This document shows positions 37,078-60,657 of a stretch of DNA of 64,000 bases, in pieces. Position 1 is the stretch's first letter. Every line of letters starts with the position of its first letter. The position numbers and the translations under genes are program-made. Under the pieces are notes generated by a model. That model had not been told where the DNA came from, made no database searches, and saw only the letters and a program-made list of their open reading frames with translations. The DNA lies in IMG/VR virus record IMGVR_UViG_3300043425_001539, positions 1-64,000 of that record; one strand, given 5' to 3'.

Positions 37078-37407
37078 TTAGGACCAAGGATTATTAATAA
37101 CTTGATATTGCATTTCAGGTTTTTTACCTGACGTCAAACCTATTCTTTGTAAAAAAGCGCCTGGGCAATCTTCCGGATCAGCTGCATAATCCAAAAATCC
37201 TGAAAGCTCACTAATAGTGCCTACACCGTCTTTCATGTAAGGCCACACTTGAGACGGTGTAAAAGGACTATTTAGTTCTTCTTTGTCTGATAAGTTACTA
37301 AGAAGCATATATGTTAAATCAGTGTGTGATGGAAAGCTTTCCATCTCTTTATACACATTTAACAAATATTTAATAGGTAATTTGTTTTGATTAATCTTCA
37401 TTTTCAT
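37078..37407 (-). CDS. Hypothetical protein (likely start 37407 or 37401)
   Basis: ORF coupled to the end of UvsX part 3. Confidence 0.55.
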   Translation of the reverse strand: MKMKINQNKLPIKYLLNVYKEMESFPSHTDLTYMLLSNLSDKEELNSPFTPSQVWPYMKDGVGTISELSGFLDYAADPEDCPGAFLQRIGLTSGKKPEMQYQVINNPWS

Positions 37408-38140
37408 CTTCAAAAATATCTCCAATAATTTCGTCGTCTTCAATTTGATTAACGTCGCCAATATTTGGAAGCATAAACATTTTTTTGATAATTTTTTCGT
37501 CAAGCTCTTCTAATACTTCTTTAGTAATAACTCTTGAAGTAAATAAATCCTGTGGTTTAATTTCTTCGCACAAATGTCTGACTGCAATGGTACGTGCCGT
37601 TGGCTTATCTTCAAAATAAAAAACTGTTTCTGTTCCGTCTTCGTTAGTTTTGACGAATCTTGTTGACTCAATTATATCTTTTTTCTCATGTCCTTTTGCA
37701 TACGTTTTTTCAAATTCTTTTTGTGTAATTAGTTTACCTTTTTGAATCCCGCAATTTTCCCAATTTATGTATTCTTCTAATCCAACATAAGGATTCATTC
37801 CTTTATAAAAGGAAATATGGAATTTAATAGGTAAAGGACGAGCAAATCTATTTTTAGCTGGTTTTGAAGTTACGATAATTCCAGTTTTCATGGCAAAACC
37901 GTTAGAACCAACTGCTCCTTCTTTAAGGCCAGCTTTTGATAATTGAACTATGATTGATGCATTGTATATAGCTCCGCCGCCACCTGAAATTGTTTGTCCT
38001 GGAATAAAAGAACCGATTGAATTATGCATAATGACACCTTCTTTAGAAATATAATGGTGCTCATCTGCAACTTCAATATCATATACTGTGTTCAAGTTGC
38101 CTTGTTCTTTTTTAAGAAGTTTTAGTTTTTTCATATTCAT
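37391..38140 (-). CDS. uvsX: UvsX/RecA part 3: 38-40-aa split-intein C-fragment plus 209-aa C-extein
   Basis: VYDIEVADEHHYI..IMHN|SIGSFIPGQTISGGGGAIYNAS..KNRF. Confidence 0.9.
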   Translation of the reverse strand: MNMKKLKLLKKEQGNLNTVYDIEVADEHHYISKEGVIMHNSIGSFIPGQTISGGGGAIYNASIIVQLSKAGLKEGAVGSNGFAMKTGIIVTSKPAKNRFARPLPIKFHISFYKGMNPYVGLEEYINWENCGIQKGKLITQKEFEKTYAKGHEKKDIIESTRFVKTNEDGTETVFYFEDKPTARTIAVRHLCEEIKPQDLFTSRVITKEVLEELDEKIIKKMFMLPNIGDVNQIEDDEIIGDIFEDENED

Positions 38141-39149
38141 TTATTTTTAATTGTAATTCTTCATATGTTATGGAATTAGTTGCGCCTTTTGATAAATTTT
38201 CCACGAATGGAATAAATTCAAGATTTGCAATATGGGAAGCTATTAAAGGGTCTATACACATCTCAAAACAAGATCTGATTGACAAGCTATGATCTATGTG
38301 ATACATCATTTTTCCTCTTTTTATTTCCCAATTATTGCCAAATTTTGCGTTTCCATGGTTGATTAAAGTTTCTTCTGTTAATATTCTAACTAATTTTATA
38401 TATTCATTAAGAGTTAATATTTCTTGATTTATGAGTTTTTCAGATATAAATTTAACATCTTCAATGTCTATACCAAGTTTGGATGCCAACATTTTTCTTT
38501 TAAAAATGTCTACATGCATAGGATTACTTGTGTTATATTTTTGATTAAATGATGATAACCATTTTTCTTTAACATTTTTGTCTGACAGCGGATTTGGACC
38601 ACCGTATTTTTCTTTACATGTATTTTTTGCTTTTTCCTTAACAATGTCACTTTTTTGTGCTATTTCATTTCCGTACTTTATTTTCCAAGTTTTTGCTCTA
38701 GACTCTTTAAATCCTTCTATTTTAAAATTATGATTTACGCCGTATTTTTCTTGTAAGGTATTTTTTCGCTTCGTTTTAATTTCATTTTTTTCCGTCTCGC
38801 TAAGCATTGAATAAGTATTTGAATAAGATTCAGATCGTTTTCTTTTTATTTCTAAATCTTTAGCTTGATTAAATGCTCGACAAGAATGACTACAAAACAT
38901 TTTTTTCCCGCCGTCATTTATCAGAGTATTACATTCTTTACATATATTCATTTCTGTTAATTCATTAAGAATATACGTTATCCTAATTTTAATATCGGTG
39001 TCAGAATTACAAAAAGATGTATTTTCTATTATTAGATTATGTAAATCTTTTCTTTTATATAATTCTTTTTTAACATTTCCTAAATTAGAAGTATTTTTGT
39101 TTTTTTCTAATACAATTTTCCAATTATTTTCTGTAATGTGAAGTTTCAT
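38112..39149 (-). mobile_element. Free-standing HNH-like homing endonuclease between UvsX parts 2 and 3
   Basis: CKEC/CSHSC zinc motifs, T..EKYG repeats, C-terminal HIDH..NL..ENLSKG. Confidence 0.8.
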
Positions 39150-39184
39150 AAGTTTTTATTTATATATCTCCATGAAACTTCACA
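39137..39184 (-). promoter_or_regulatory. 13-bp hairpin sequestering the HEG AUG, with a late promoter in the loop
   Basis: TGTGAAGTTTCAT..GATATATAAATAAAAA..ATGAAACTTCACA. Confidence 0.8.
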
Positions 39185-39203
39185 AATCATACATTTAGTT
39201 TCT

Positions 39204-40409
39204 TTATTGAGTTTGCTGCAAAATAAAATCACCTTCATTTAATTCATCTGCAGTTTTCCAGGAAGTCTCTTTATTCGGATCTTCATCCACAAGAAATTTA
39301 TGTAAAGGAGAACACTCAATTTCAATATTGTCTTCAAAAAATAATTTAACTGTTCTTGTTTTATCATATTTAAAAGTGTTTAACACCTCTTTACCGCCGT
39401 AAACAGTCATAACGGTATCACCTATTTTAATTTCATTAAGTTGTTTAATTTCGCCATTACCCATCATAATTTCTGTATCGCCTAAGGCACAAGCATATGT
39501 GTGATTTGTGAATATAAACGGGATTTTAAATTCTGCAAGATCTGTAGTAATCACACGGAAAAGTGATCTTAGATCTTGTTGTTTTGTCATATCCTTTTTT
39601 TCACTTCCTGATGCTGCATCTGCTTTTTCTTTGGTTGTTGCAAGATTTCCTAAAGAATCAAGAACCAATAAAATTTTAGGTAATTCTGCTCCTTTATCTT
39701 TTGCTTTTTTAAGTTGGTCACAAAGATTAGAAACAAAATGTCGTACTTCAAGTGATGTACTTACAGGTTGATACCGAACTCCTTCAGGGTCTATTCCAAA
39801 GTTACGCATAGTAGTTTCATCAACCGCAGCTTCTGAGTCACAGTATATAATATGATATCCCATTTTTTGGGCTTCACGGCAAGCATTCAAGGTTAAGAAT
39901 GTTTTTCCTGTGTTATGTGAAGATATACCGTCGCCGGCCCAATACCTATGATTTTCATGAAGCACCTCCCAGTCATATACTTCTTCTGTTCTTGTTGCAG
40001 AACATTTTTTTACATTATAAAAGCCATCTTTAGTTAAAACAGAATCCTTTGTTGTTAAATCTTCTGCTTTTTTCCAGCCATTTAATGTTTCATAAAGATG
40101 ATCTTGTGAAGATTCGCATACATAATTATTTTCTAATTCTAATTTGTATATTTTTCTTGGTTTCTTAATATAAAAGTTTCCAATAGGTTGATAACCGTCT
40201 GGTGTATCAATAAAAATTGCCGAATCTTTTAAAGATACTAATTCTCCAGCTGTAATTTCTATTGAATTTTCTTCAGCATGTAAATTAAATCTCTGTATAA
40301 TTTCATTATCCGATAAATGATCAAAATTTTCTTTAGGATAACAAAATTTTAATTCTTCGCGTAAAATTTCAGGGTCATAAATTGCTTTTTCTGTTTCAAG
40401 ATTTTGCAT
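39204..40409 (-). CDS. uvsX: UvsX/RecA part 2: 166-aa IntC, 140-aa extein, 95-aa IntN of a second intein
   Basis: SQDH..VYDWEV..SSHN|TGKT..DSE..VLDSLGNL..FTNHTYA|CALGDT..CSPLHKF..LNEGDFI. Confidence 0.92.
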   Translation of the reverse strand: MQNLETEKAIYDPEILREELKFCYPKENFDHLSDNEIIQRFNLHAEENSIEITAGELVSLKDSAIFIDTPDGYQPIGNFYIKKPRKIYKLELENNYVCESSQDHLYETLNGWKKAEDLTTKDSVLTKDGFYNVKKCSATRTEEVYDWEVLHENHRYWAGDGISSHNTGKTFLTLNACREAQKMGYHIIYCDSEAAVDETTMRNFGIDPEGVRYQPVSTSLEVRHFVSNLCDQLKKAKDKGAELPKILLVLDSLGNLATTKEKADAASGSEKKDMTKQQDLRSLFRVITTDLAEFKIPFIFTNHTYACALGDTEIMMGNGEIKQLNEIKIGDTVMTVYGGKEVLNTFKYDKTRTVKLFFEDNIEIECSPLHKFLVDEDPNKETSWKTADELNEGDFILQQTQ

Positions 40410-40419
40410 ATAGTGTATT

Positions 40420-41562
40420 TTATTTTAAATTTATATTCAATAAGTTTTTGATAGTTTCTTGATTATTTCTTTGATAATCCCAAACTACAAAATATAAAAA
40501 TCCAGCTTCTTCTGCAATACGTTTTTTTTCTTTATCTTTTTGCAATGATTCTTCATAAGTATAAATAGGATTTTTCCAATTTTCTTTTGACTTGTTAGAA
40601 TCAGCGTGCCAAAAACTTCCGTGATATTCAATAATTATCTTTTTTTCAGGAATGACAAAGTCATAAAAATAAATCTTTTTATTTACGTTATCATATAAAA
40701 AATATTCATTTTTTCCGTATAAACAATTAAGATTTATAAAGTAATTTTTTTCTATTTCTTTAAAGAAAATATATGATTCAGTTGAAAAAAATTTGTTTCT
40801 TTTTATTCTTTTACAAATTATTTCTAATTTTTCATCATCTGGTTTATTTGCCCAATTCTTTTTAAATAAGTCTATTCTTTTTTCATATCTTTTTATACCT
40901 TCGTCATAACCGTATTTTTTTACATATGCTTGAAGAGATGTTGTAGTTTGTCTTTCTTTTAATGCATTTTTTGCATCTTCAAGTGTTAAACCGCGTTCCA
41001 AATAAAAACTTAACTGTCTATCAGAAACAGCTTTCCCAAGTTTTTTATACAAAGTATTTTTTATTTTACCTGCGCGTGAACATCTATTAAAAATTTTTTG
41101 TTTAGCCTCTTCTTGCGTTAGACCCTGATTTTTTACAAGCCAATCTGCATTTAAACCATTACCTTTTCTTTTGTTTATTTCTGCTTTTTCTTCTTTTGTT
41201 TTTTTGGAAAGCGTTGCTTGTATTTTTGCAGCAATCTCAGGCGTACAGGTTGATTGTCTTTTCTTAATTTTTTCAATTGCTTGAGCTTTACTCCATCCTC
41301 TGTCTATCCAATAATTAATATTTAATTGGGTTGCAGAAAAAAAACCAATCATTGATAAACAAATTCTGCTTGCCTGTTTTTTTTCGATCTGAACATAATT
41401 ATCAAGATAACGTTGATACATTTTCTCAAATTCGTTTGTGTCTGCATCATAATTAAAATTTGAAACAAGCTGTCTTACATACTTGATATAATCATCGTAA
41501 GACAGCTTGTTTTTAAAAATGCTCAACGGATTTTTACTCTTCGATTGTGTACCTTTCATCAA
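40420..41562 (-). mobile_element. Free-standing Vsr/DUF559-like homing endonuclease between UvsX parts 1 and 2
   Basis: Helical repeats (YW..RG.S..EA), then FYDF..IIIEYHGSFWHA..KD..K..IA...GF....VWD. Confidence 0.8.
40431..40457 (-). promoter_or_regulatory. Middle-type promoter AAACT-N15-AATATAA inside the last HEG codons, upstream of UvsX part 2
   Basis: Minus strand reads AAGAAACTATCAAAAACTTATTGAATATAA. Confidence 0.6.
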
Positions 41563-41818
41563 ATGTGCGGGTTTTCAGTATATATACTTTAACCTTTTCA
41601 TTTTTTGGCAAACATCCTGATTCACCCGCAAAACATATTGATCTTGAGTTTGGGATGCCTCCAAAGAGAGAGCCAGTTAATTGCGCATTTAACATAAAAT
41701 TGCCCGTAGGAATATATTCATCAATTTTAGAAAAAGTGTTGTGAGTGATGATCGATCCTTTAGGATTAATTTTTGACAGCGCTGAATCTAATTCAGAAAA
41801 AGAAAATGATTTAGCCAT
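41534..41818 (-). CDS. uvsX: UvsX/RecA part 1: 68-aa N-extein plus 26-aa split-intein N-fragment
   Basis: IPTGNFMLNAQLTGSLFGGIP..FAGESG|CLPKNEKVKV. Confidence 0.9.
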   Translation of the reverse strand: MAKSFSFSELDSALSKINPKGSIITHNTFSKIDEYIPTGNFMLNAQLTGSLFGGIPNSRSICFAGESGCLPKNEKVKVYILKTRTFDERYTIEE

Positions 41819-41820
41819 TT

Positions 41821-42084
41821 TTAGTTTATAGTATTTTTAAATTCTTGTAATGTTTTTTGTAGATTTGTATGTGAACTTGTTAAAGTTTGTTTGATTGATA
41901 AATATTCACTTTCAGGTAAAACGCTGGTATTAATAGTTTCAATGTATGAATCTCCTATTTCAATTGGTATGATATAGGACTCGGTATAAATATCAGGTTT
42001 TGAATGTAAATCTATATAGTTTACCAATTCATAATTTGAAAGATTATTAACATTTACATAGTGTATAAGAATTTCTTTTCTCAT
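41821..42084 (-). CDS. Hypothetical protein
   Basis: 87-aa ORF coupled to the PolB C-subunit gene. Confidence 0.55.
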   Translation of the reverse strand: MRKEILIHYVNVNNLSNYELVNYIDLHSKPDIYTESYIIPIEIGDSYIETINTSVLPESEYLSIKQTLTSSHTNLQKTLQEFKNTIN

Positions 42085-43262
42085 TAAAACAATTGTGTTC
42101 TGACAATTAATTCCGGTGAAAGCGCAGGTAAACCCATTGCAACTATAAAGCGATTAATAGGATCAATAATACATCGTGCAAATTGCGCATCATAATCAAC
42201 CGGTGGTGCAATTTCTACAGGATAATTACCAGGCAAATATCCAAATACGTTTTCCCCGCCATCATTATTTTTTGCATAATAGAATCTAACCTTGTCGCCG
42301 CTTTTAATTAATTGATACTTATTTTTCCATTTACTATTATTGATTAAAAAATTATGATATCCTGAAGCACGAACGTGCATTGGACAATGGTCATTAATTA
42401 CTAATTTTTTTCTATCATCAGCAATTCCTTTTTCATAATCTCCTATGCTTGAAGACATAGAAATATTTTCAATGTTATCCAACATAAATGTTTCTTTTTC
42501 CCGTTTAAGAATTTCTGTAAATTTGCGTAAATTTAATGATTTACGTTCTCTTAGGATAACTTCAAGCAATTCTTTTAACTTTTTTCTTGCAAATGCTGGT
42601 GTTGAAGATTGAGCAATCTCCACGCCTGTTGCTTTAATTTTTTGTTGTGAATTATAAAAAATTCCGCCATTTGCACCACCTTTCCAAGCAAGATCTAATA
42701 CATATTTCTTTTTCTTTAAAAAGATTCCTGAATATGAAAGGGTTTCCATTTCCAAATCTTGAATATTTTCTGTGCCTGATTTTTTAGCCATAGATTCAAA
42801 ATTTTTCTCAAGATATTCTTTAAGACGATTTTCATAAATCATCATAATTAGTTTTCTTGTATCTTCTTTCCAATCACAGCCATTGACAATTTCTTGTAAA
42901 GTTATATAACAAGAATCCGTGTCTCCATAAACAGCAACCTCATCTTTTACCGGGTTTACTGTGTTTAATCCTAGTAATTCATGAAGCTTTTTATCTTTAT
43001 GCCAAAATTCTAAAAAATAACGATTAATAATTCTGCTTGTAAATTTAATCATTTCTTGTCCTTGTAAAGTAATAGCTTCAGCTACTTTTACGTTATAACC
43101 AACAAAATAAGTTGATGCTAATGCTCCATAACAACTATTAATAAAGATTTTTACAGATTGTTCCTCATTTTTTTTAAGATTCATTAAATATGTTAACCTT
43201 TCTATTTCCGATAAAATTTCTTCTCTAGTTGCAGAAGAAGGATCAATTTTACAGTATTTCAT
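42084..43262 (-). CDS. polB: Family B DNA polymerase, C-terminal subunit (gp43B-like)
   Basis: Motif B QSVKIFINSCYG, AITLQGQ, motif C YGDTDS, KKKY, GVEIAQSSTP. Confidence 0.92.
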   Translation of the reverse strand: MKYCKIDPSSATREEILSEIERLTYLMNLKKNEEQSVKIFINSCYGALASTYFVGYNVKVAEAITLQGQEMIKFTSRIINRYFLEFWHKDKKLHELLGLNTVNPVKDEVAVYGDTDSCYITLQEIVNGCDWKEDTRKLIMMIYENRLKEYLEKNFESMAKKSGTENIQDLEMETLSYSGIFLKKKKYVLDLAWKGGANGGIFYNSQQKIKATGVEIAQSSTPAFARKKLKELLEVILRERKSLNLRKFTEILKREKETFMLDNIENISMSSSIGDYEKGIADDRKKLVINDHCPMHVRASGYHNFLINNSKWKNKYQLIKSGDKVRFYYAKNNDGGENVFGYLPGNYPVEIAPPVDYDAQFARCIIDPINRFIVAMGLPALSPELIVRTQLF

Positions 43263-43278
43263 TAAAAATTGTTTAAAT

Positions 43279-43305
43279 TTATATTCATTATTTATTAAAT
43301 AGTTT
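43279..43305 (-). promoter_or_regulatory. Middle-type promoter AAACT-N15-AATATAA for the PolB C-subunit
   Basis: Shared motif. Confidence 0.55.
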
Positions 43306-43389
43306 TTTTTAAAAATATCACCAAATTAATGTTTTTTTCATTTGTGTGTTTTATGTTTTTTATATATAAACAAAAATAATATCATAGAA

Positions 43390-44463
43390 ATGTTTAAAGA
43401 ACTTATTACAAATCACTTAAAAGAATTCGGCACGCTAAAAGGATTTCAGCAAAAATATAAAGATTTAATTAAAACCGAAATTATAAACTACCATTCATTT
43501 CAAGAATTTGCTTATTTTCAATATTATGAATTAACAGAACGACCTAAATGTAATTGTGGTTCAAGCGTTTCTTTTCGTGGCTTTGCAAACGGTTATTTAA
43601 AATTTTGTAAACCATGTGGGTTAAAACAAAAATGGATAAACTATGAAAAACCAAACATCAAAGAAGTTAAAAAATGTTTAAATTGCAATAATGAATATGA
43701 ATTCAAGCCAAGAAAAAAAGAACGTTTATTCTGTTCAACTAAATGTTCAGCAAAATATATGCACGAAAATATGAGTAAAGAAAATAAAGAAATGCGTGTA
43801 TCAAAAATTAAAAAAACCAATTTATTAAAATATGGCAGTGAGTGGGTAGTTAATTCAGAATACACAAAAAATAAAACATTTGAAAAACATGGATATTACT
43901 ATCCATTCCAATCGGAAAAAATTTTAAATAAATGTACTGAAACACACAAAAAACTTACAGGATATACAAATCCTTTACATAATCCGTTGACTGTAAAAAA
44001 AATGATTGATACTAAAATGGATAAATATGGAGATTTGCTTAAACCAATATATTCATATAAAGATTTTATTTTACCGTCTGGGACTACAATTAAAGTACAA
44101 GGATATGAAGATCTTGCTATTAATTATTTACTTAAATATTATAAAGAATCGGATATCATAATAGGGCGCGCCCAAATTGAAAAATACACAGGTCCTTTAA
44201 CATATACATCAGGTAATAAAATTCATAGGTATTATCCTGATATTTATATTGCATCAAAAAACTTAGTAATTGAAGTAAAATCCAAATATACTTTTAATTT
44301 GCATAAAGAAAAACTCAATTTTGTATATGACAATTTAAAAAAAGGCCCATTAACATTTCATATATTTATTTTTAATAGTAGAAATGCCAATGAACCTATT
44401 ATTATAGAATCAATTGATGAATTGTGTGTTAGATCTTTACCGCCTGCTCCTCATTTTTTTTAA
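43390..44463 (+). mobile_element. Free-standing PD-(D/E)xK homing endonuclease on the opposite strand (likely ATG at 43390)
   Basis: Zinc ribbons, KT...KYG repeats, VQGYE..YYPDIYI..VIEVKS; late motif TATATATAAAC at 43361-43371. Confidence 0.75.
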
Positions 44464-44548
44464 GATTCATTAAATTGGTTAATCTTGATATTTCAGCTTT
44501 TATTTCATCAATGCTGGAATTATTAGGATCTATTTGGCAATATTTCAT
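44429..44548 (-). pseudogene. 39-aa duplicate of the PolB C-subunit N-terminus
   Basis: MKYCQIDPNNSSIDEIKAEISRLTNLMNLKKNEEQAVKI* is 27/39 identical to the start of 42084-43262. Confidence 0.9.
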
Positions 44549-44569
44549 ATTTATAATTTTTATAAACTT

Positions 44570-44600
44570 AGCGGTTCTTGTTTATTTGACAAGAACCGCT
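44570..44600. terminator. 12-bp hairpin after the clamp gene (no clear U tract)
   Basis: AGCGGTTCTTGT/ACAAGAACCGCT. Confidence 0.5.
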
Positions 44601-44607
44601 GTTTAAA

Positions 44608-45351
44608 TTATTCTGCTTTACCAATAATCATTTTGGTGTCAGATTCTATTGAGTGAAAAATTAAGCGGTCCTCGGAAAGATAAACCATTGTATCTTCTTT
44701 ATCCAAAAAAGCAAATTGGTTTTTATAAACCGACACAGATATGTCTGCTGATTTATTTTCAATTTGACCAATATTAAGATTAAAGCTTTTACCTGATACT
44801 ATTACATTTCCTTTTTTTACTCCAAGAGTTAAAAGCTTTTGGTCGGAATCAATACCAGCTAAGCTATTAATTTTGGATTGAATTTCTTTAGTAAGAACAA
44901 ATGAAATTTCTGAAGATGAAGAATCGGCAATTTTGTCCATCATTTCATCCGTGATATAGGTAAAAAGCCTTAAACTTGCACATTGAAAGTTGATGTCCAA
45001 TGATTCATTTTTAAGATTAATATCTGTTCCTACATTTCCGTCTGATGTTGATTCTTGGTGTAGCTCAAAGTTAATTGCGCTGTTACCAAAATGCGAAAAA
45101 GCTTTCATCATTCGTTCAACAGAAAATAGACCAAATTTGACATCTTCGTCAAATGCATCATCATTGCTAAACATTCGCCCAATTGGTATCTTTGAAGATT
45201 TAACAACTGATCTTTCAGGTGTATGCGTTTTTGCTTTTAAATAACCGTCTTCAACTTCAAGTAAAAGGTTTGATGAAACGGGTGAAAATCTTTTTAAGAA
45301 ATTTGTTAGCTCTTCGGTTGAAGTAAGTTGTAAAGATTTAGTACTTTTCAT
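44608..45351 (-). CDS. Sliding clamp (gp45/PCNA-like)
   Basis: 247 aa, two-domain alpha/beta pattern; next to PolB; middle-like motif upstream. Confidence 0.6.
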   Translation of the reverse strand: MKSTKSLQLTSTEELTNFLKRFSPVSSNLLLEVEDGYLKAKTHTPERSVVKSSKIPIGRMFSNDDAFDEDVKFGLFSVERMMKAFSHFGNSAINFELHQESTSDGNVGTDINLKNESLDINFQCASLRLFTYITDEMMDKIADSSSSEISFVLTKEIQSKINSLAGIDSDQKLLTLGVKKGNVIVSGKSFNLNIGQIENKSADISVSVYKNQFAFLDKEDTMVYLSEDRLIFHSIESDTKMIIGKAE

Positions 45352-45395
45352 TGCGTATAATTTTAATTATTTTATTCATATTTAAACATATAGTT

Positions 45396-46013
45396 TTAAA
45401 TTATCTGATCTATTAATCCGTATTTTAAACATTGTTTAGAGTTCCACCAAATATCATGTGAAAGTATTTTATCTAAATCTTTAGCAGGAATTTTTGTTTT
45501 TGCTGTATACCATTCCTTTATGGTTTTCATAATGTTATCATTGCTTGTCATCTGATCTTTAAGTCTACTATATTTTCCCCAATGTACATCACTTAATTCA
45601 TGAATTAACATATATGAATTTTTTCTCATTAATCTTTTTGCTCCTGCTGTTGATATAATAGTTGCACCAGATGCTGCAGCTCCTTCAATTACTGTTATAA
45701 CTGGCGTTAATGAAGAAATGCGTTCAATCGTATCCGCAATTGCAAATGATGAAAAAACTTCGCCACCCATAGAATTTATATGTAAAAATATAGGCGCGGG
45801 TGATCCTACTTCTTGCATTGATGAAAATGCGGTGGGCGCTAATCTCATTGATAGTTCATGCAAGGCGCGATTAAGAGCCATTGCTGATGATTCATCCACT
45901 CCGCCATAAAACCAAACGTGGTCACCTATAACCGAAACTGCTTGATGCGTAGATAAGTCTGAATCATAATCATTCTTTTTTAAATTTAATAAATTTGTGT
46001 TTTGTGTAATCAT
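45396..46013 (-). CDS. ClpP-family serine protease
   Basis: IFLHINSMGG, AASGAT, MLIHE, CLKYGLIDQII. Confidence 0.85.
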   Translation of the reverse strand: MITQNTNLLNLKKNDYDSDLSTHQAVSVIGDHVWFYGGVDESSAMALNRALHELSMRLAPTAFSSMQEVGSPAPIFLHINSMGGEVFSSFAIADTIERISSLTPVITVIEGAAASGATIISTAGAKRLMRKNSYMLIHELSDVHWGKYSRLKDQMTSNDNIMKTIKEWYTAKTKIPAKDLDKILSHDIWWNSKQCLKYGLIDQII

Positions 46014-47508: not shown

Positions 47509-47835
47509 TTAGATTGAATCCAATCCCAAATCTTCAACCTCTTTTTCTTTTTTGTTTTTCTTTTTTACTTTTTTAGAATCTTCCTCTTCAGAATCTTCTT
47601 CCTCTTCAGAATCTTCTTCCTCTTCAGAATCTTCTTCCTCTTTAGAATCTTCTTCCTCTTTAGAATCTTCTTCCTCTTTAGAATCTTCTTCCTCTTCAGA
47701 ATCTTCTTCCTTTTCAGAATCTTCTTCCTCTTCAGAATCTTCTACGTTTTTTTTCACAAGGTCTTCTTCCTCTTCAGACAATTTATTTTTCTCAAACTCT
47801 GTTATAAAGTCGCCGAAGCTTTTTAAATGTTTCAT
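47509..47835 (-). CDS. Acidic repeat protein with a capsid-targeting-like N-terminus
   Basis: MKHLKSFGDFITE followed by about 9 copies of S(E/K)EEED. Confidence 0.7.
   Translation of the reverse strand: MKHLKSFGDFITEFEKNKLSEEEEDLVKKNVEDSEEEEDSEKEEDSEEEEDSKEEEDSKEEEDSKEEEDSEEEEDSEEEEDSEEEDSKKVKKKNKKEKEVEDLGLDSI
47575..47742. repeat. 18-nt coding tandem repeat, about 9 copies
   Basis: Variants of agaatcttcttcctcttc. Confidence 0.9.
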
Positions 47836-59280: not shown

Positions 59281-60657
59281 TTATTTTATATATTTTTTAA
59301 GTTGTTCAATTTCATCTTCAATATCCATATATTCTTTTTTTGCCTTTTTTCTTTTACCGTAGTAATTTGCAAGAATCGTTCTAAACACCGAGTCCTCTTC
59401 CTTTTTAAACAAAGCTCCTGACGACGTTTTAATATATTTATCTACGTCAACTTCTTCATTTTTATCGACGTTGTATAGATATGATTCCGGAGATATATTC
59501 CATTGCCTCATTATTGAAGGATAAAGAGACGCAAAGTCAAACGATGCAACCCATTCATATATTCCTGTTTTGGGATCAACGACAAAAGCTCCTTCATAGT
59601 GTTCCTTCTTTTTAGTTATTTTATCCGTTTTAGGAAAAACCTTACCTCTTGACCAATTTTCGCGTGCCATTGCAGCTTCAGCCATCCAAATTGGGGAAAA
59701 TGCCCGATTTGCTTCAACTTGGGTAATATTTCCAAGCAGCAAAAAAGTTTGCATTGTGTTAATTTTTTCATCGATCATTTCAACCAATTTGGTATCAACC
59801 GCATTATAGAAAATATATGTTTCAAAATCATTTTCATACATATCTTGCAAAGTGCCTGGATATTTAATTTTATTTATTCCCAGCGCTGCTTTTGCTACAT
59901 AGTCCAATGTGTTATTTTCTTTGATATCAATAACCCGATCCCATTTTTTATATACATCAAGATAGTCAACAACAAGTCGGTGAACAGGAAACTGTAAATC
60001 ACCTGCTAATTTGTATGTTGGTGAACATGCTGAGATGTCAATGTTTAATCTTTTGCATCGAGTAATTAAATATGTCCAGTCAAAACCAATAAAATTCCAT
60101 CCAGTCAAAAGTGGCATTTTTGGAACTGCTTTCAAGAAAAAAGAAGAAAGCATATCATATTCGGTTTTAAAATATAGATAATTAAAATCTACTTTTTGAT
60201 TGATATGTTCCTCAATTTTTTTCTTGATGTTAAATATTTGTTCAGCAGTTAATTGCTTTGTTCCCATCGAGATTACTTTTTCTTTATGACAAAAGGTAAT
60301 TGCAGTGACAGGAGTTTTTGCCAATTCTGGTTTAGGCCATTCATCGCCTACAAAGACCTCAATATCAATAAAGAATTTTTTGGGAACATTATTTGAATAA
60401 ATGTTTTTGGTGCGTTCTTCAGGTAATGAAAGTAAAAATTCTTCAATTCTCCATTTACTTAAGAATTTAGTTTTTTTCTTCTTTACAGGTTTGCCGTCCC
60501 AGGACATAACTCCTGGGAACGGTTTATCATTTCCTGTGCAATATTCCCATTCAAACATTTCTTCCATTGGAACAGATATCCTATCAAGAGCAACATCACC
60601 ATTTTCATTAAAATAAGAAATTGTAAGTGTTGAATCTTTTTGTTCAATATCAATCAT
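59281..60657 (-). CDS. polB: Family B DNA polymerase, N-terminal subunit (exonuclease plus motif A; gp43A-like)
   Basis: DIE, GWN..GFD, YN..D, YEGAFV, DFASLYPSI...NISPE; ends in the fingers helix. Confidence 0.92.
   Translation of the reverse strand: MIDIEQKDSTLTISYFNENGDVALDRISVPMEEMFEWEYCTGNDKPFPGVMSWDGKPVKKKKTKFLSKWRIEEFLLSLPEERTKNIYSNNVPKKFFIDIEVFVGDEWPKPELAKTPVTAITFCHKEKVISMGTKQLTAEQIFNIKKKIEEHINQKVDFNYLYFKTEYDMLSSFFLKAVPKMPLLTGWNFIGFDWTYLITRCKRLNIDISACSPTYKLAGDLQFPVHRLVVDYLDVYKKWDRVIDIKENNTLDYVAKAALGINKIKYPGTLQDMYENDFETYIFYNAVDTKLVEMIDEKINTMQTFLLLGNITQVEANRAFSPIWMAEAAMARENWSRGKVFPKTDKITKKKEHYEGAFVVDPKTGIYEWVASFDFASLYPSIMRQWNISPESYLYNVDKNEEVDVDKYIKTSSGALFKKEEDSVFRTILANYYGKRKKAKKEYMDIEDEIEQLKKYIK

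What the first reader, a model, noticed from the sequence alone, without database searches (positions are those of the whole stretch)
42084..44600. HEG invasion of polB rescued by a replacement 5' end, leaving a 39-aa stub
Seen: on the minus strand the order is clamp, stub (44548-44429), antisense HEG, middle promoter, complete polB-C. The stub is 27/39 identical to the start of polB-C and stops inside motif B (..EEQAVKI* versus ..EEQSVKIFINSCYG). It keeps its ATG and a promoter-like GAACC-N15-ATTATAA, and overlaps the HEG 3' end. Inference: an intron-free, intein-free way to occupy a conserved catalytic motif, in which the element carries a diverged copy of the gene start plus a promoter. This is feasible because the split polymerase puts motif B only about 40 codons from a start codon. 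The stub is a fingers helix and could compete for the N-subunit.
Basis: partly seen in the sequence, partly recalled or inferred. Interest (0 to 1): 0.78.

Follow-up and report, generated by a model that had tools for sequence, protein, structure and literature searches.

The report
Homing-endonuclease scar beside split phage polymerase
A selfish endonuclease gene has entered an uncultured jumbo phage next to the second half of its split DNA polymerase, leaving a 39-codon duplicate of the gene's start that ends inside a catalytic motif and probably marks where the enzyme cut.

Summary
On the minus strand the order is: sliding clamp, hairpin, 39-codon stub, antisense endonuclease gene, 127-nt spacer, complete polB-C. 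The stub matches polB-C codons 1-39 (27/39 aa, 87/117 nt). Homology stops one base into codon 40, at the Lys-Ile of motif B.

About 35 relatives, including one with 90% identical polB-C, have the clamp directly before polB-C, with no endonuclease gene and no duplicate. The endonuclease (Pfam DUF7487, PD-(D/E)XK-like) belongs to a subfamily found immediately upstream of polB-C in six other phage lineages. None of those has a stub.

The best reading is a freestanding homing endonuclease acquired by one-sided, illegitimate break repair. The stub is the old gene start, severed at the cut. The working start and a promoter-like spacer came with the element.

Evidence on which copy is foreign is suggestive, not decisive. 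The spacer does carry a promoter-like motif shared with three other replication-gene upstream regions.

The closest precedent is the fungal mitochondrial mORF "gene hybrid", seen here in mirror image. I rate it a new variant of a known kind. Cleavage, expression and any role of the stub peptide are untested.

The parts
44608..45351 (-). Sliding clamp gene (gp45/PCNA-like, 247 aa). In relatives its stop abuts or overlaps the polB-C start.
   Evidence: No Pfam or PDB sequence hit. Predicted structure matches gp45-type clamps and PCNA at TM 0.77-0.79. Adjacency to polB-C in relatives.
44569..44601 (.). Perfect GC-containing hairpin in the 59-nt clamp-stub spacer. Terminator-like, scoring better on the + (endonuclease) strand.
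   Evidence: Terminator scan. Fold -21.4 kcal/mol, z = -6.1. Unique in the window. Absent from the 90% relative L015, where the spacer is 4 nt.
44429..44548 (-). Stub: 39-codon copy of the polB-C start plus a TAA created at the junction. Homology ends between 44431 and 44430.
43390..44463 (+). Freestanding endonuclease gene (357 aa from the ATG; the ORF is open from TTG 43342). It has paired CxxC zinc-ribbon-like motifs, repeated KYG modules, and a C-terminal PD-(D/E)XK-like domain (YYPDIY...IEVKS).
   Evidence: Pfam DUF7487, E = 1.6e-29. Family alignment with invariant D284 and K297 and near-invariant E295. Model pLDDT 79; the C-domain resembles endonuclease folds at Z 5-7.
44410..44463 (+). 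Non-native C-terminal tail of the endonuclease ORF (about 18 codons). It reads through the junction into the antisense of the stub.
   Evidence: Relatives end 18-25 residues earlier. Residues 344-357 are disordered in the model.
43361..43370 (+). TATATATAAA element 19 nt upstream of the endonuclease ATG. It is conserved next to the endonuclease start in five other lineages and is a candidate endonuclease promoter.
   Evidence: Spacer comparison. The related GATATATAR class has 7 hits on the coding strand against 1.4 expected.
43279..43304 (-). Promoter-like motif AACTA-N13-GAATATAA, ending 16 nt before the polB-C ATG.
   Evidence: Four hits in the window, all on the minus strand, none in 30 shuffles. 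The others lie before the polB-N operon, gp44 and recA piece B.
42084..43262 (-). polB-C: the complete C-terminal subunit of the split family B polymerase (392 aa). It covers the second finger helix with motif B, the palm with motif C, and the thumb.
   Evidence: Pfam DNA_pol_B, profile positions 152-416. PHROG 1918/262. Aligns to RB69 gp43 558-817.
43146..43262 (-). Working copy of codons 1-39, probably imported with the element.
   Evidence: Longest branch in the three-way comparison: 15 unique changes versus 8 (stub) and 7 (L015). 30/39 aa identity to P0002, against 35.8 +/- 2.0 expected for pairs 90-95% identical elsewhere.
43125..43151 (-). Motif B codons (KIFINSCYG) in the working gene. 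Ser43 is AGT, with unusual S36, C44 and L48 nearby. This is a possible immunity signature.
   Evidence: All 22 distinct endonuclease-free alleles use TCN for this Ser.
59281..60657 (-). polB-N: the N-terminal subunit (exonuclease, palm motif A, first finger helix), 16 kb away.
   Evidence: tblastn with S-SSM5 gp43 residues 101-473. Pfam exo1 plus DNA_pol_B profile positions 25-146. Aligns to RB69 111-489.

Best explanation
A freestanding homing endonuclease gene of a polB-C-associated DUF7487 subfamily invaded the clamp/polB-C operon of this jumbo phage.

Proposed sequence of events:
1. The enzyme cut the resident polB-C in the motif B codons, about 117 nt from the ATG.
2. The right-hand end was repaired by homologous copying from a related donor phage. 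That donor carried the endonuclease gene just upstream of its own polB-C.
3. Copying brought in the donor's polB-C 5' end, a promoter-bearing spacer and the endonuclease gene.
4. The left-hand end, still carrying resident codons 1-39 attached to the clamp gene, was joined illegitimately just beyond the endonuclease gene's 3' end.

Result: the old gene start survives as a 39-codon stub truncated at the break. The working gene is a hybrid with an imported start and its own promoter. The endonuclease ORF acquired a read-through tail.

Shown here: the anatomy, the link between endonuclease and duplication, the family's site preference, and the recurring promoter-like motif.
Inferred: the cut site, which copy is foreign, promoter activity, and that the stub is a functionless relic.
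For: 1. The duplicate is exact in register and ends one base into codon 40, in the most conserved DNA of the gene.
2. Thirty-five or so clade relatives lack both endonuclease and duplicate and have the clamp directly before polB-C. This includes L015 (90% aa, 81% nt).
3. Homologues of the endonuclease (38-49% identity) sit immediately 5' of polB-C in six other lineages with different upstream neighbours. That defines a site-specific freestanding element with one conserved flank only, the condition for one-sided repair.
4. Its catalytic-type residues are intact.
5. Stub to L015 is 22/117 differences, equal to the 18.5% gene-wide divergence. The working 5' end to L015 is 29. The working copy, although under selection, has the longest branch (15 versus 8 and 7 unique changes).
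6. The working N-terminus is 30/39 identical to P0002, at the bottom of the range (mean 35.8 +/- 2.0) for pairs that similar elsewhere.
7. The motif B Ser is AGT against TCN in 22 of 22 endonuclease-free alleles.
8. The spacer motif belongs to the same class as those before polB-N, gp44 and a recA fragment.
9. One-sided homing with illegitimate junctions is documented for T4 (PMC2988022).
Against: - No donor allele was found.
- With 24 taxa the 117-nt tree does not resolve stub, working 5' end and L015. The 15-versus-8 site count is not significant on its own.
- The terminator-like hairpin lies between clamp and stub, not between stub and endonuclease gene, and is absent from L015. The inserted block could therefore begin at the clamp stop.
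- None of the six other endonuclease-bearing lineages shows a stub, so the mechanism rests on one case.
- Cleavage specificity is unknown.
Confidence: 0.6

Rival explanations
1. Self-contained gene-end-carrying element, a mirror image of fungal mORF elements. The unit is endonuclease gene + promoter + diverged 5' copy. The stub serves as the left homology arm, so the unit homes as a block into its own cleavage site inside motif B of clamp/polB-C-type genomes. On this view the present phage received it by ordinary two-sided homing from a donor that already had the stub.
For: - The architecture mirrors the Allomyces and Glomus gene hybrids: foreign gene end, endonuclease ORF, displaced native end (PMC3630166).
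- The stub plus clamp would give homology left of the break, and polB-C beyond codon 40 would give homology right of it.
- The stub is an intact ORF with no sign of decay: 8 unique changes versus 7 in L015.
- The hairpin could be part of such a block.
Against: - Only one genome lineage carries the arrangement, seen in three identical contigs.
- The six other lineages with this endonuclease subfamily have it as a plain intergenic gene without a stub.
- No second, independently diverged stub was found among small ORFs.
Confidence: 0.2
2. Reverse polarity. The whole working polB-C is resident. The block hairpin + stub + endonuclease gene + spacer was inserted between the clamp stop and the polB-C ATG, and the stub is a fragment of a donor's polB-C carried on the endonuclease gene's 3' flank.
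For: - The hairpin and 59-nt spacer are absent from L015, whose clamp stop is 4 nt from the polB-C ATG.
- L024 also has a terminator hairpin just 3' of its endonuclease gene.
- The larger 5' tree weakly pairs the working copy with L015 (UFBoot 61).
Against: - The stub is closer to L015 (22 differences) than the working copy is (29), and closer than expected for a foreign piece.
- The working copy carries the unusual AGT Ser and the S36, C44 and L48 residues, which would then have to be resident peculiarities.
- It still needs an earlier event of the first kind to create the stub.
Confidence: 0.12
3. In-situ tandem duplication of the resident 5' end, by slippage or staggered repair. The two copies then diverged, and the endonuclease gene landed between them independently.
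For: Both copies fall in the same small subclade with L015 (UFBoot 81), and both share the phage's AT-rich codon style.
Against: - The copies differ at 30/117 sites, more than either differs from L015 (22 and 29). A duplication younger than the split from L015 should give the smallest distance.
- The selected copy would have had to evolve about twice as fast as the unselected one.
- The duplication boundary coincides with the endonuclease gene's 3' end to within about 25 nt.
Confidence: 0.06
4. Assembly or chimera artefact.
For: The source is a metagenome, and repeats can mislead assemblers.
Against: - Two IMG/VR contigs from different samples (49 kb and 238 kb) are identical to the window over 4513 nt across all junctions.
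- The stub protein is also on record from a further 4.1-kb contig.
- The two copies are only 74% identical, too diverged to cause mis-joining.
Confidence: 0.01

Closest known systems
Fungal mitochondrial mobile ORF (mORF) gene hybrids: Allomyces macrogynus atp6; Glomus atp6, atp9, cox2, nad3 (PMC3630166)
   Same: - An endonuclease ORF arrives together with a diverged copy of one end of an essential gene.
- The hybrid gene stays functional without intron or intein.
- The native end is displaced as a relic that resembles close relatives more than the inserted copy does.
   Different: - Here the 5' end is replaced, not the 3' end, so a promoter must come along rather than a stop codon.
- The endonuclease gene is antisense and not fused in frame.
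- The nuclease is DUF7487/PD-(D/E)XK-like, not LAGLIDADG or GIY-YIG.
- The host is a jumbo phage.
- The similarity contrast between native and inserted copies is weak (81% versus 75%) rather than stark (91-98% versus 64-81%).
Freestanding homing endonucleases of T4-like phages (seg and mob genes; mobE in Aeh1 nrdA; seg43 in Aeromonas phage 25 gene 43) (PMC2988022, PMC2677866)
   Same: - An intergenic endonuclease gene next to a conserved replication gene.
- Sporadic presence among relatives.
- A probable cut site some 200-250 bp away in the neighbouring gene.
- Promoters for the downstream host gene associated with the insert.
- One-sided illegitimate repair is known experimentally.
   Different: - No T4-type case that I found in this literature leaves a partial duplicate of the host gene.
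- The nuclease family differs.
- Antisense orientation is rare in T4 (segD only).
Naturally split PolB of T4-related phages (gp43A/gp43B, split in the fingertip) (PMC3061061, PMC2988022)
   Same: Two subunits divided between the two finger helices. Here that is about RB69 residues 500/523.
   Different: The halves lie 16 kb apart, against 2 bp to 3 kb in T4-like phages. The split is conserved across a large uncultured clade. It pre-dates the endonuclease event and is independent of it.
Fractured genes: split inteins with a freestanding endonuclease gene between the halves (Dassa et al. 2009, PMC2677866)
   Same: Same phage world, and the same window has two such loci in recA. [quoted passage not shown] The same promoter-like motif precedes recA piece B.
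   Different: No intein is involved at polB-C. The gene is kept whole by a duplicated 5' end rather than by protein splicing.

Membership tests
Freestanding homing endonuclease gene | Encodes a nuclease domain with catalytic residues intact | tested here: met
   DUF7487, E = 1.6e-29. Invariant D284 and K297 and near-invariant E295 in 12 homologues. The C-domain resembles endonuclease-like/PD-(D/E)XK folds, but only at Z 5-7.
Freestanding homing endonuclease gene | Presence/absence polymorphism among close relatives at one conserved site | tested here: met
   Absent from about 35 clade relatives. Present immediately 5' of polB-C in seven lineages.
Freestanding homing endonuclease gene | Not embedded in an intron or intein | tested here: met
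   No Rfam intron match in 41500-45500. No Hint/intein domain in polB-C or the stub. The gene is on the opposite strand.
Freestanding homing endonuclease gene | Cleaves the endonuclease-free allele site-specifically and drives gene conversion | not testable with these tools
   Needs an enzyme assay or phage crosses. The motif B cut site is inferred from the stub boundary only.
Freestanding homing endonuclease gene | Co-conversion of flanking host sequence | tested here: inconclusive
   The working 5' end is more diverged from L015 than expected and has the AGT Ser codon, but the trees are unresolved.
Fungal-type mORF gene hybrid | Endonuclease ORF flanked by an inserted copy and a displaced native copy of a gene end | tested here: met
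   Stub / endonuclease gene / working copy, in mirror image (5' end).
Fungal-type mORF gene hybrid | Native relic clearly more similar to close relatives than the inserted copy | tested here: inconclusive
   95 versus 88 of 117 nt to L015. UFBoot 81 in the small tree, lost in the larger one.
Fungal-type mORF gene hybrid | LAGLIDADG or GIY-YIG endonuclease fused to, or in phase with, the 3' end of a mitochondrial gene | tested here: not met
   DUF7487 nuclease, antisense, at the 5' end of a phage gene.
Split PolB (gp43A/gp43B type) | Two ORFs that together cover a complete family B polymerase, divided in the fingertip | tested here: met
   polB-N covers S-SSM5 gp43 101-473 and RB69 111-489. polB-C covers S-SSM5 467-830 and RB69 558-817.
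Split PolB (gp43A/gp43B type) | Cistrons adjacent (2 bp to 3 kb apart) | tested here: not met
   About 16 kb apart in the window.

The most novel reading that the evidence does not exclude
The arrangement may be a working mobile unit rather than a scar. It would be a 5'-end-carrying homing cassette: endonuclease gene, promoter, and a recoded, cleavage-immune gene start. It would insert at its own cut site inside polymerase motif B, using the stub as its left homology arm. That would be the first phage counterpart, and the first 5'-end counterpart, of fungal mORF elements. The stub, which encodes the second finger helix, might also be translated and modulate assembly of the split polymerase.
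Probability: 0.2. Interest if true: 0.75.

Novelty: new variant of a known kind. Interest (0 to 1): 0.55.

Why it matters
- It is a natural record of how a freestanding homing endonuclease can enter a genome that shares homology on only one side of the break. Until now that has been known mainly from engineered T4 crosses.
- The scar points to a testable cut site in polymerase motif B for an uncharacterised nuclease family (DUF7487).
- It shows that an essential gene can survive invasion of its catalytic core with neither intron nor intein, because the element supplies a replacement start and a promoter. The split polymerase makes this possible by placing motif B 38 codons from a start codon.
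- It extends the fungal mitochondrial "gene hybrid" principle to phages and to 5' ends.
- It identifies a polB-C-specific endonuclease lineage spread across uncultured jumbo phages.

Tried and rejected
- Near-identical DNA in GenBank phages: none. The best protein relatives there are Lak and other huge phages at 35-45%.
- Stub promoter GAACC-N15-ATTATAA: rejected, because the box lies in a hairpin stem. The generic sigma-70 scan was no better than shuffles.
- Hairpin as a repeated element: a single copy in the window.
- Clamp identity by sequence profile against PDB: no hit. Resolved through structure.
- Stubs in the six other endonuclease-bearing lineages: none.
A 45-aa N-terminal profile found only the stub itself plus three 67-75-aa ORFs that stop later, after TLQGQE, near contig ends.
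- Donor or parental alleles by degenerate DNA patterns: only the phage's own contigs in IMG/VR and nothing in the JGI metagenome set.
- Phylogeny of the 117-nt segment: too short to resolve.
- Intron or intein at the site: none.
- Foldseek on the whole endonuclease model: only weak hits, E >= 0.02.
Full report
**What is there**

The window comes from an AT-rich, uncultured jumbo phage with a T4-like replication module. One IMG/VR contig holding the same sequence is 238 kb long.

On the minus strand the genes run in this order:
- sliding clamp, 44608-45351
- a 59-nt spacer with a perfect hairpin
- a 39-codon ORF, the stub, 44548-44429
- an endonuclease gene on the opposite strand (43390-44463; the ORF is open from 43342)
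- a 127-nt spacer
- a 392-codon gene, polB-C, 43262-42084

polB-C is the C-terminal half of a family B DNA polymerase (Pfam profile positions 152-416). The N-terminal half, with the exonuclease and the first part of the polymerase domain, lies 16 kb away at 59281-60657.

Against RB69 gp43 the N-subunit ends near residue 500, and polB-C residue 36 aligns with residue 558. The split therefore falls in the fingertip, and K38 corresponds to the motif B lysine K560. Splits at the fingertip are known in T4-related phages and are tolerated in an engineered Pfu enzyme (PMC3061061). All relatives found share the split, so it pre-dates the event discussed here.

**The observation**

- The stub matches polB-C residues 1-39 at 27/39 positions without gaps, E = 5e-17, and at 87/117 bases.
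- Homology starts at the ATG and ends one base into codon 40. The stub reads ..AAG ATC TAA where the gene reads ..AAA ATC TTT ATT AAT.
- The stop codon is created by the junction.
- The endonuclease ORF runs 35 nt into the antisense of the stub. Its last 18-25 residues have no counterpart in relatives and are disordered in the model. The native end of the endonuclease gene therefore lies within about 25 nt of the breakpoint.
- Two contigs from other samples are identical across all junctions, so this is not an assembly artefact.
- The clamp assignment is supported by fold, though not by sequence.

**Relatives**

Ten IMG/VR or Logan loci and about 25 JGI metagenome loci of the same clade (polB-C 66-90% identical) have the clamp gene directly in front of polB-C, usually with overlapping or abutting stop and start. 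They have no endonuclease gene and no second copy of the start. Even relatives with only 41-44% identical polB-C keep a clamp gene just upstream.

The closest relative, L015 (90% aa, 81% nt), also has an uninterrupted recA. In the window recA is broken in three pieces.

**The endonuclease**

- It carries Pfam DUF7487.
- It has paired CxxC motifs, repeated KYG modules and a C-terminal YYPDIY...IEVKS block. The Asp and Lys are invariant, and the Glu nearly so, across 12 homologues.
- The C-terminal domain of the model resembles endonuclease-like and PD-(D/E)XK folds at modest Z of 5-7.
- Homologues 38-49% identical sit immediately upstream of polB-C in six other lineages: L011, L016-18, L019-20, L021-23, L024-26 and L029. 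Most are divergently oriented, with a 34-126-nt spacer. The gene on their far side differs from lineage to lineage.
- None of these lineages has a stub.

This is the signature of a freestanding homing endonuclease tied to polB-C, with conserved homology on one flank only.

**Which copy is the original?**

| Comparison over 117 nt | Differences |
|---|---|
| Stub vs L015 | 22 (18.8%, the same as the 18.5% over the rest of the gene) |
| Working 5' end vs L015 | 29 |
| Stub vs working 5' end | 30 |

- Unique changes are 8 in the stub, 15 in the working copy and 7 in L015.
- A copy under selection should not evolve faster than a relic, so a recent in-situ duplication is unlikely.
- At the protein level, pairs 90-95% identical over the rest of the protein share 35.8 +/- 2.0 of the first 39 residues. 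The working copy shares 30 with P0002 and the stub shares 32.
- The working gene also has AGT for the motif B serine, where all 22 distinct endonuclease-free alleles have TCN. It has unusual S36, C44 and L48 within 12 codons of the breakpoint.
- Trees of the 117-nt segment are inconclusive. An 8-taxon tree pairs the stub with L015 (UFBoot 81). A 24-taxon tree only groups the three sequences together and puts the working copy on a long branch.

I conclude that the stub is probably the resident start and the working start probably imported. This is the weakest link in the argument.

**Expression signals**

Its GAACC box lies in the stem of a hairpin (-21.4 kcal/mol, z = -6.1) that scores as a terminator, better on the endonuclease strand.

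The spacer before polB-C does hold AACTA-N13-GAATATAA, ending 16 nt before the ATG. The strict pattern occurs four times in 64 kb, always on the coding strand, and never in shuffles. The other three sites precede the polB-N operon, the gp44 clamp loader and recA piece B. A promoter that restores polB-C expression after separation from the clamp operon is therefore plausible. Its timing class is unknown.

A second conserved element (TATATATAAA on the endonuclease strand) lies next to the endonuclease start in six lineages.

**Mechanism**

The simplest account is homing with homology on one side.

1. The enzyme cuts an endonuclease-free polB-C in motif B.
2. The right end copies from a donor through the donor's gene start, spacer and endonuclease gene.
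3. The left end, still holding codons 1-39, is joined without homology just past the endonuclease gene.

Such one-sided, illegitimate repair has been shown for T4 intron homing (PMC2988022).

The outcome mirrors the fungal mitochondrial mORF gene hybrids. There an endonuclease ORF brings a foreign C-terminal gene end and the native end remains as a relic (PMC3630166). In those elements the relic can serve as a homology arm. The same could hold here, making the whole block mobile, but only one lineage shows the arrangement.

**Open points**

- The hairpin lies between clamp and stub and is absent from L015. The inserted block might therefore start at the clamp stop, which is the reverse-polarity rival.
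- L024 has a comparable terminator hairpin just 3' of its endonuclease gene.
- No donor allele was found.
- Cleavage, transcription and translation of the stub are untested.

**Verdict**

It needs three corrections: the stub promoter, the general nature of the element, and the strength of the evidence for direction. I rate it a new variant of a known kind and of moderate interest.

Noticed in passing
window 37391-41818 (-): recA/uvsX is fractured into three ORFs matching L015 RecA residues 1-68, 68-208 and 207-417 at 92-97% identity. The breaks are two split inteins: a 26-aa N-fragment with a 165-aa C-fragment, and a roughly 95-aa N-fragment with a 38-aa C-fragment. Each has a freestanding endonuclease gene between its halves: Vsr-like at 40420-41562 and HNH at 38112-39149. 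These are "fractured genes" in the sense of Dassa et al. 2009. L015 has the gene uninterrupted.
   Followed up: partly
window 61215-61191, 43304-43279, 40456-40432, 24566-24542 (-): The promoter-like motif AACTA-N11-14-GAATATAA occurs four times, only on the coding strand, with 0 expected. Each hit ends 16-22 nt before the ATG of a replication or recombination gene. One lies inside the 3' end of the Vsr-like endonuclease gene, before recA piece B.
   Followed up: partly
window 51941, 48254, 39168, 31724, 21395, 16874, 1924 (-): A second recurring upstream motif, GATATATAR (7 hits against 1.4 expected), lies shortly before start codons, including that of the HNH endonuclease gene. It may be a late-type promoter of this phage group.
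   Followed up: no
window 38112-39149 (-) versus 43390-44463 (+): The HNH endonuclease in recA matches the N-terminal part of the DUF7487 profile (the repeated KYG modules) but has an HNH catalytic end. The polB-C endonuclease has a PD-(D/E)XK-like end. This suggests one DNA-binding scaffold paired with different nuclease domains.
   Followed up: no
window 47509-47835 (-): A 108-aa ORF made almost entirely of acidic EEEDS/KEEDS repeats, between the two topoisomerase II genes. Function unknown.
   Followed up: no
L016 1054-4881; proteins P0100, P0109, P0114, P0119, P0071, P0115: In several relatives polB-C is itself interrupted near motif C by an intein or by split-intein halves. In L016 there is an intervening 384-aa ORF and a second DUF7487 gene. 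polB-C is a hotspot for mobile elements.
   Followed up: no
L030 1206-1433, L031 1259-1480 (P0236, P0237, P0238): Three short polB-C-like ORFs from different lineages stop at nearly the same place, after ..AEAVTLQGQE, close to contig ends. This may be another insertion site (intron or endonuclease gene) about 70 codons into polB-C.
   Followed up: no
L011 4824-4827, L016 6059-6062, L021 6059-6062: In three lineages the endonuclease gene's stop overlaps the stop of the convergent upstream gene by 4 nt, although the upstream genes are unrelated. The 3' boundary of the cassette is very tight.
   Followed up: no
L024 5376-6146 and 7371-9035: One relative has an additional SegE-like GIY-YIG gene between clamp and polB-C, and an intein in topoisomerase II. 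The clamp/polB-C interval accumulates insertions in endonuclease-bearing lineages.
   Followed up: no
L011 2672-4827: An array of five paralogous small genes (N-termini like MKLVRE..., shared SDPIxDMGIG motif) lies directly upstream of the endonuclease gene in that lineage.
   Followed up: no
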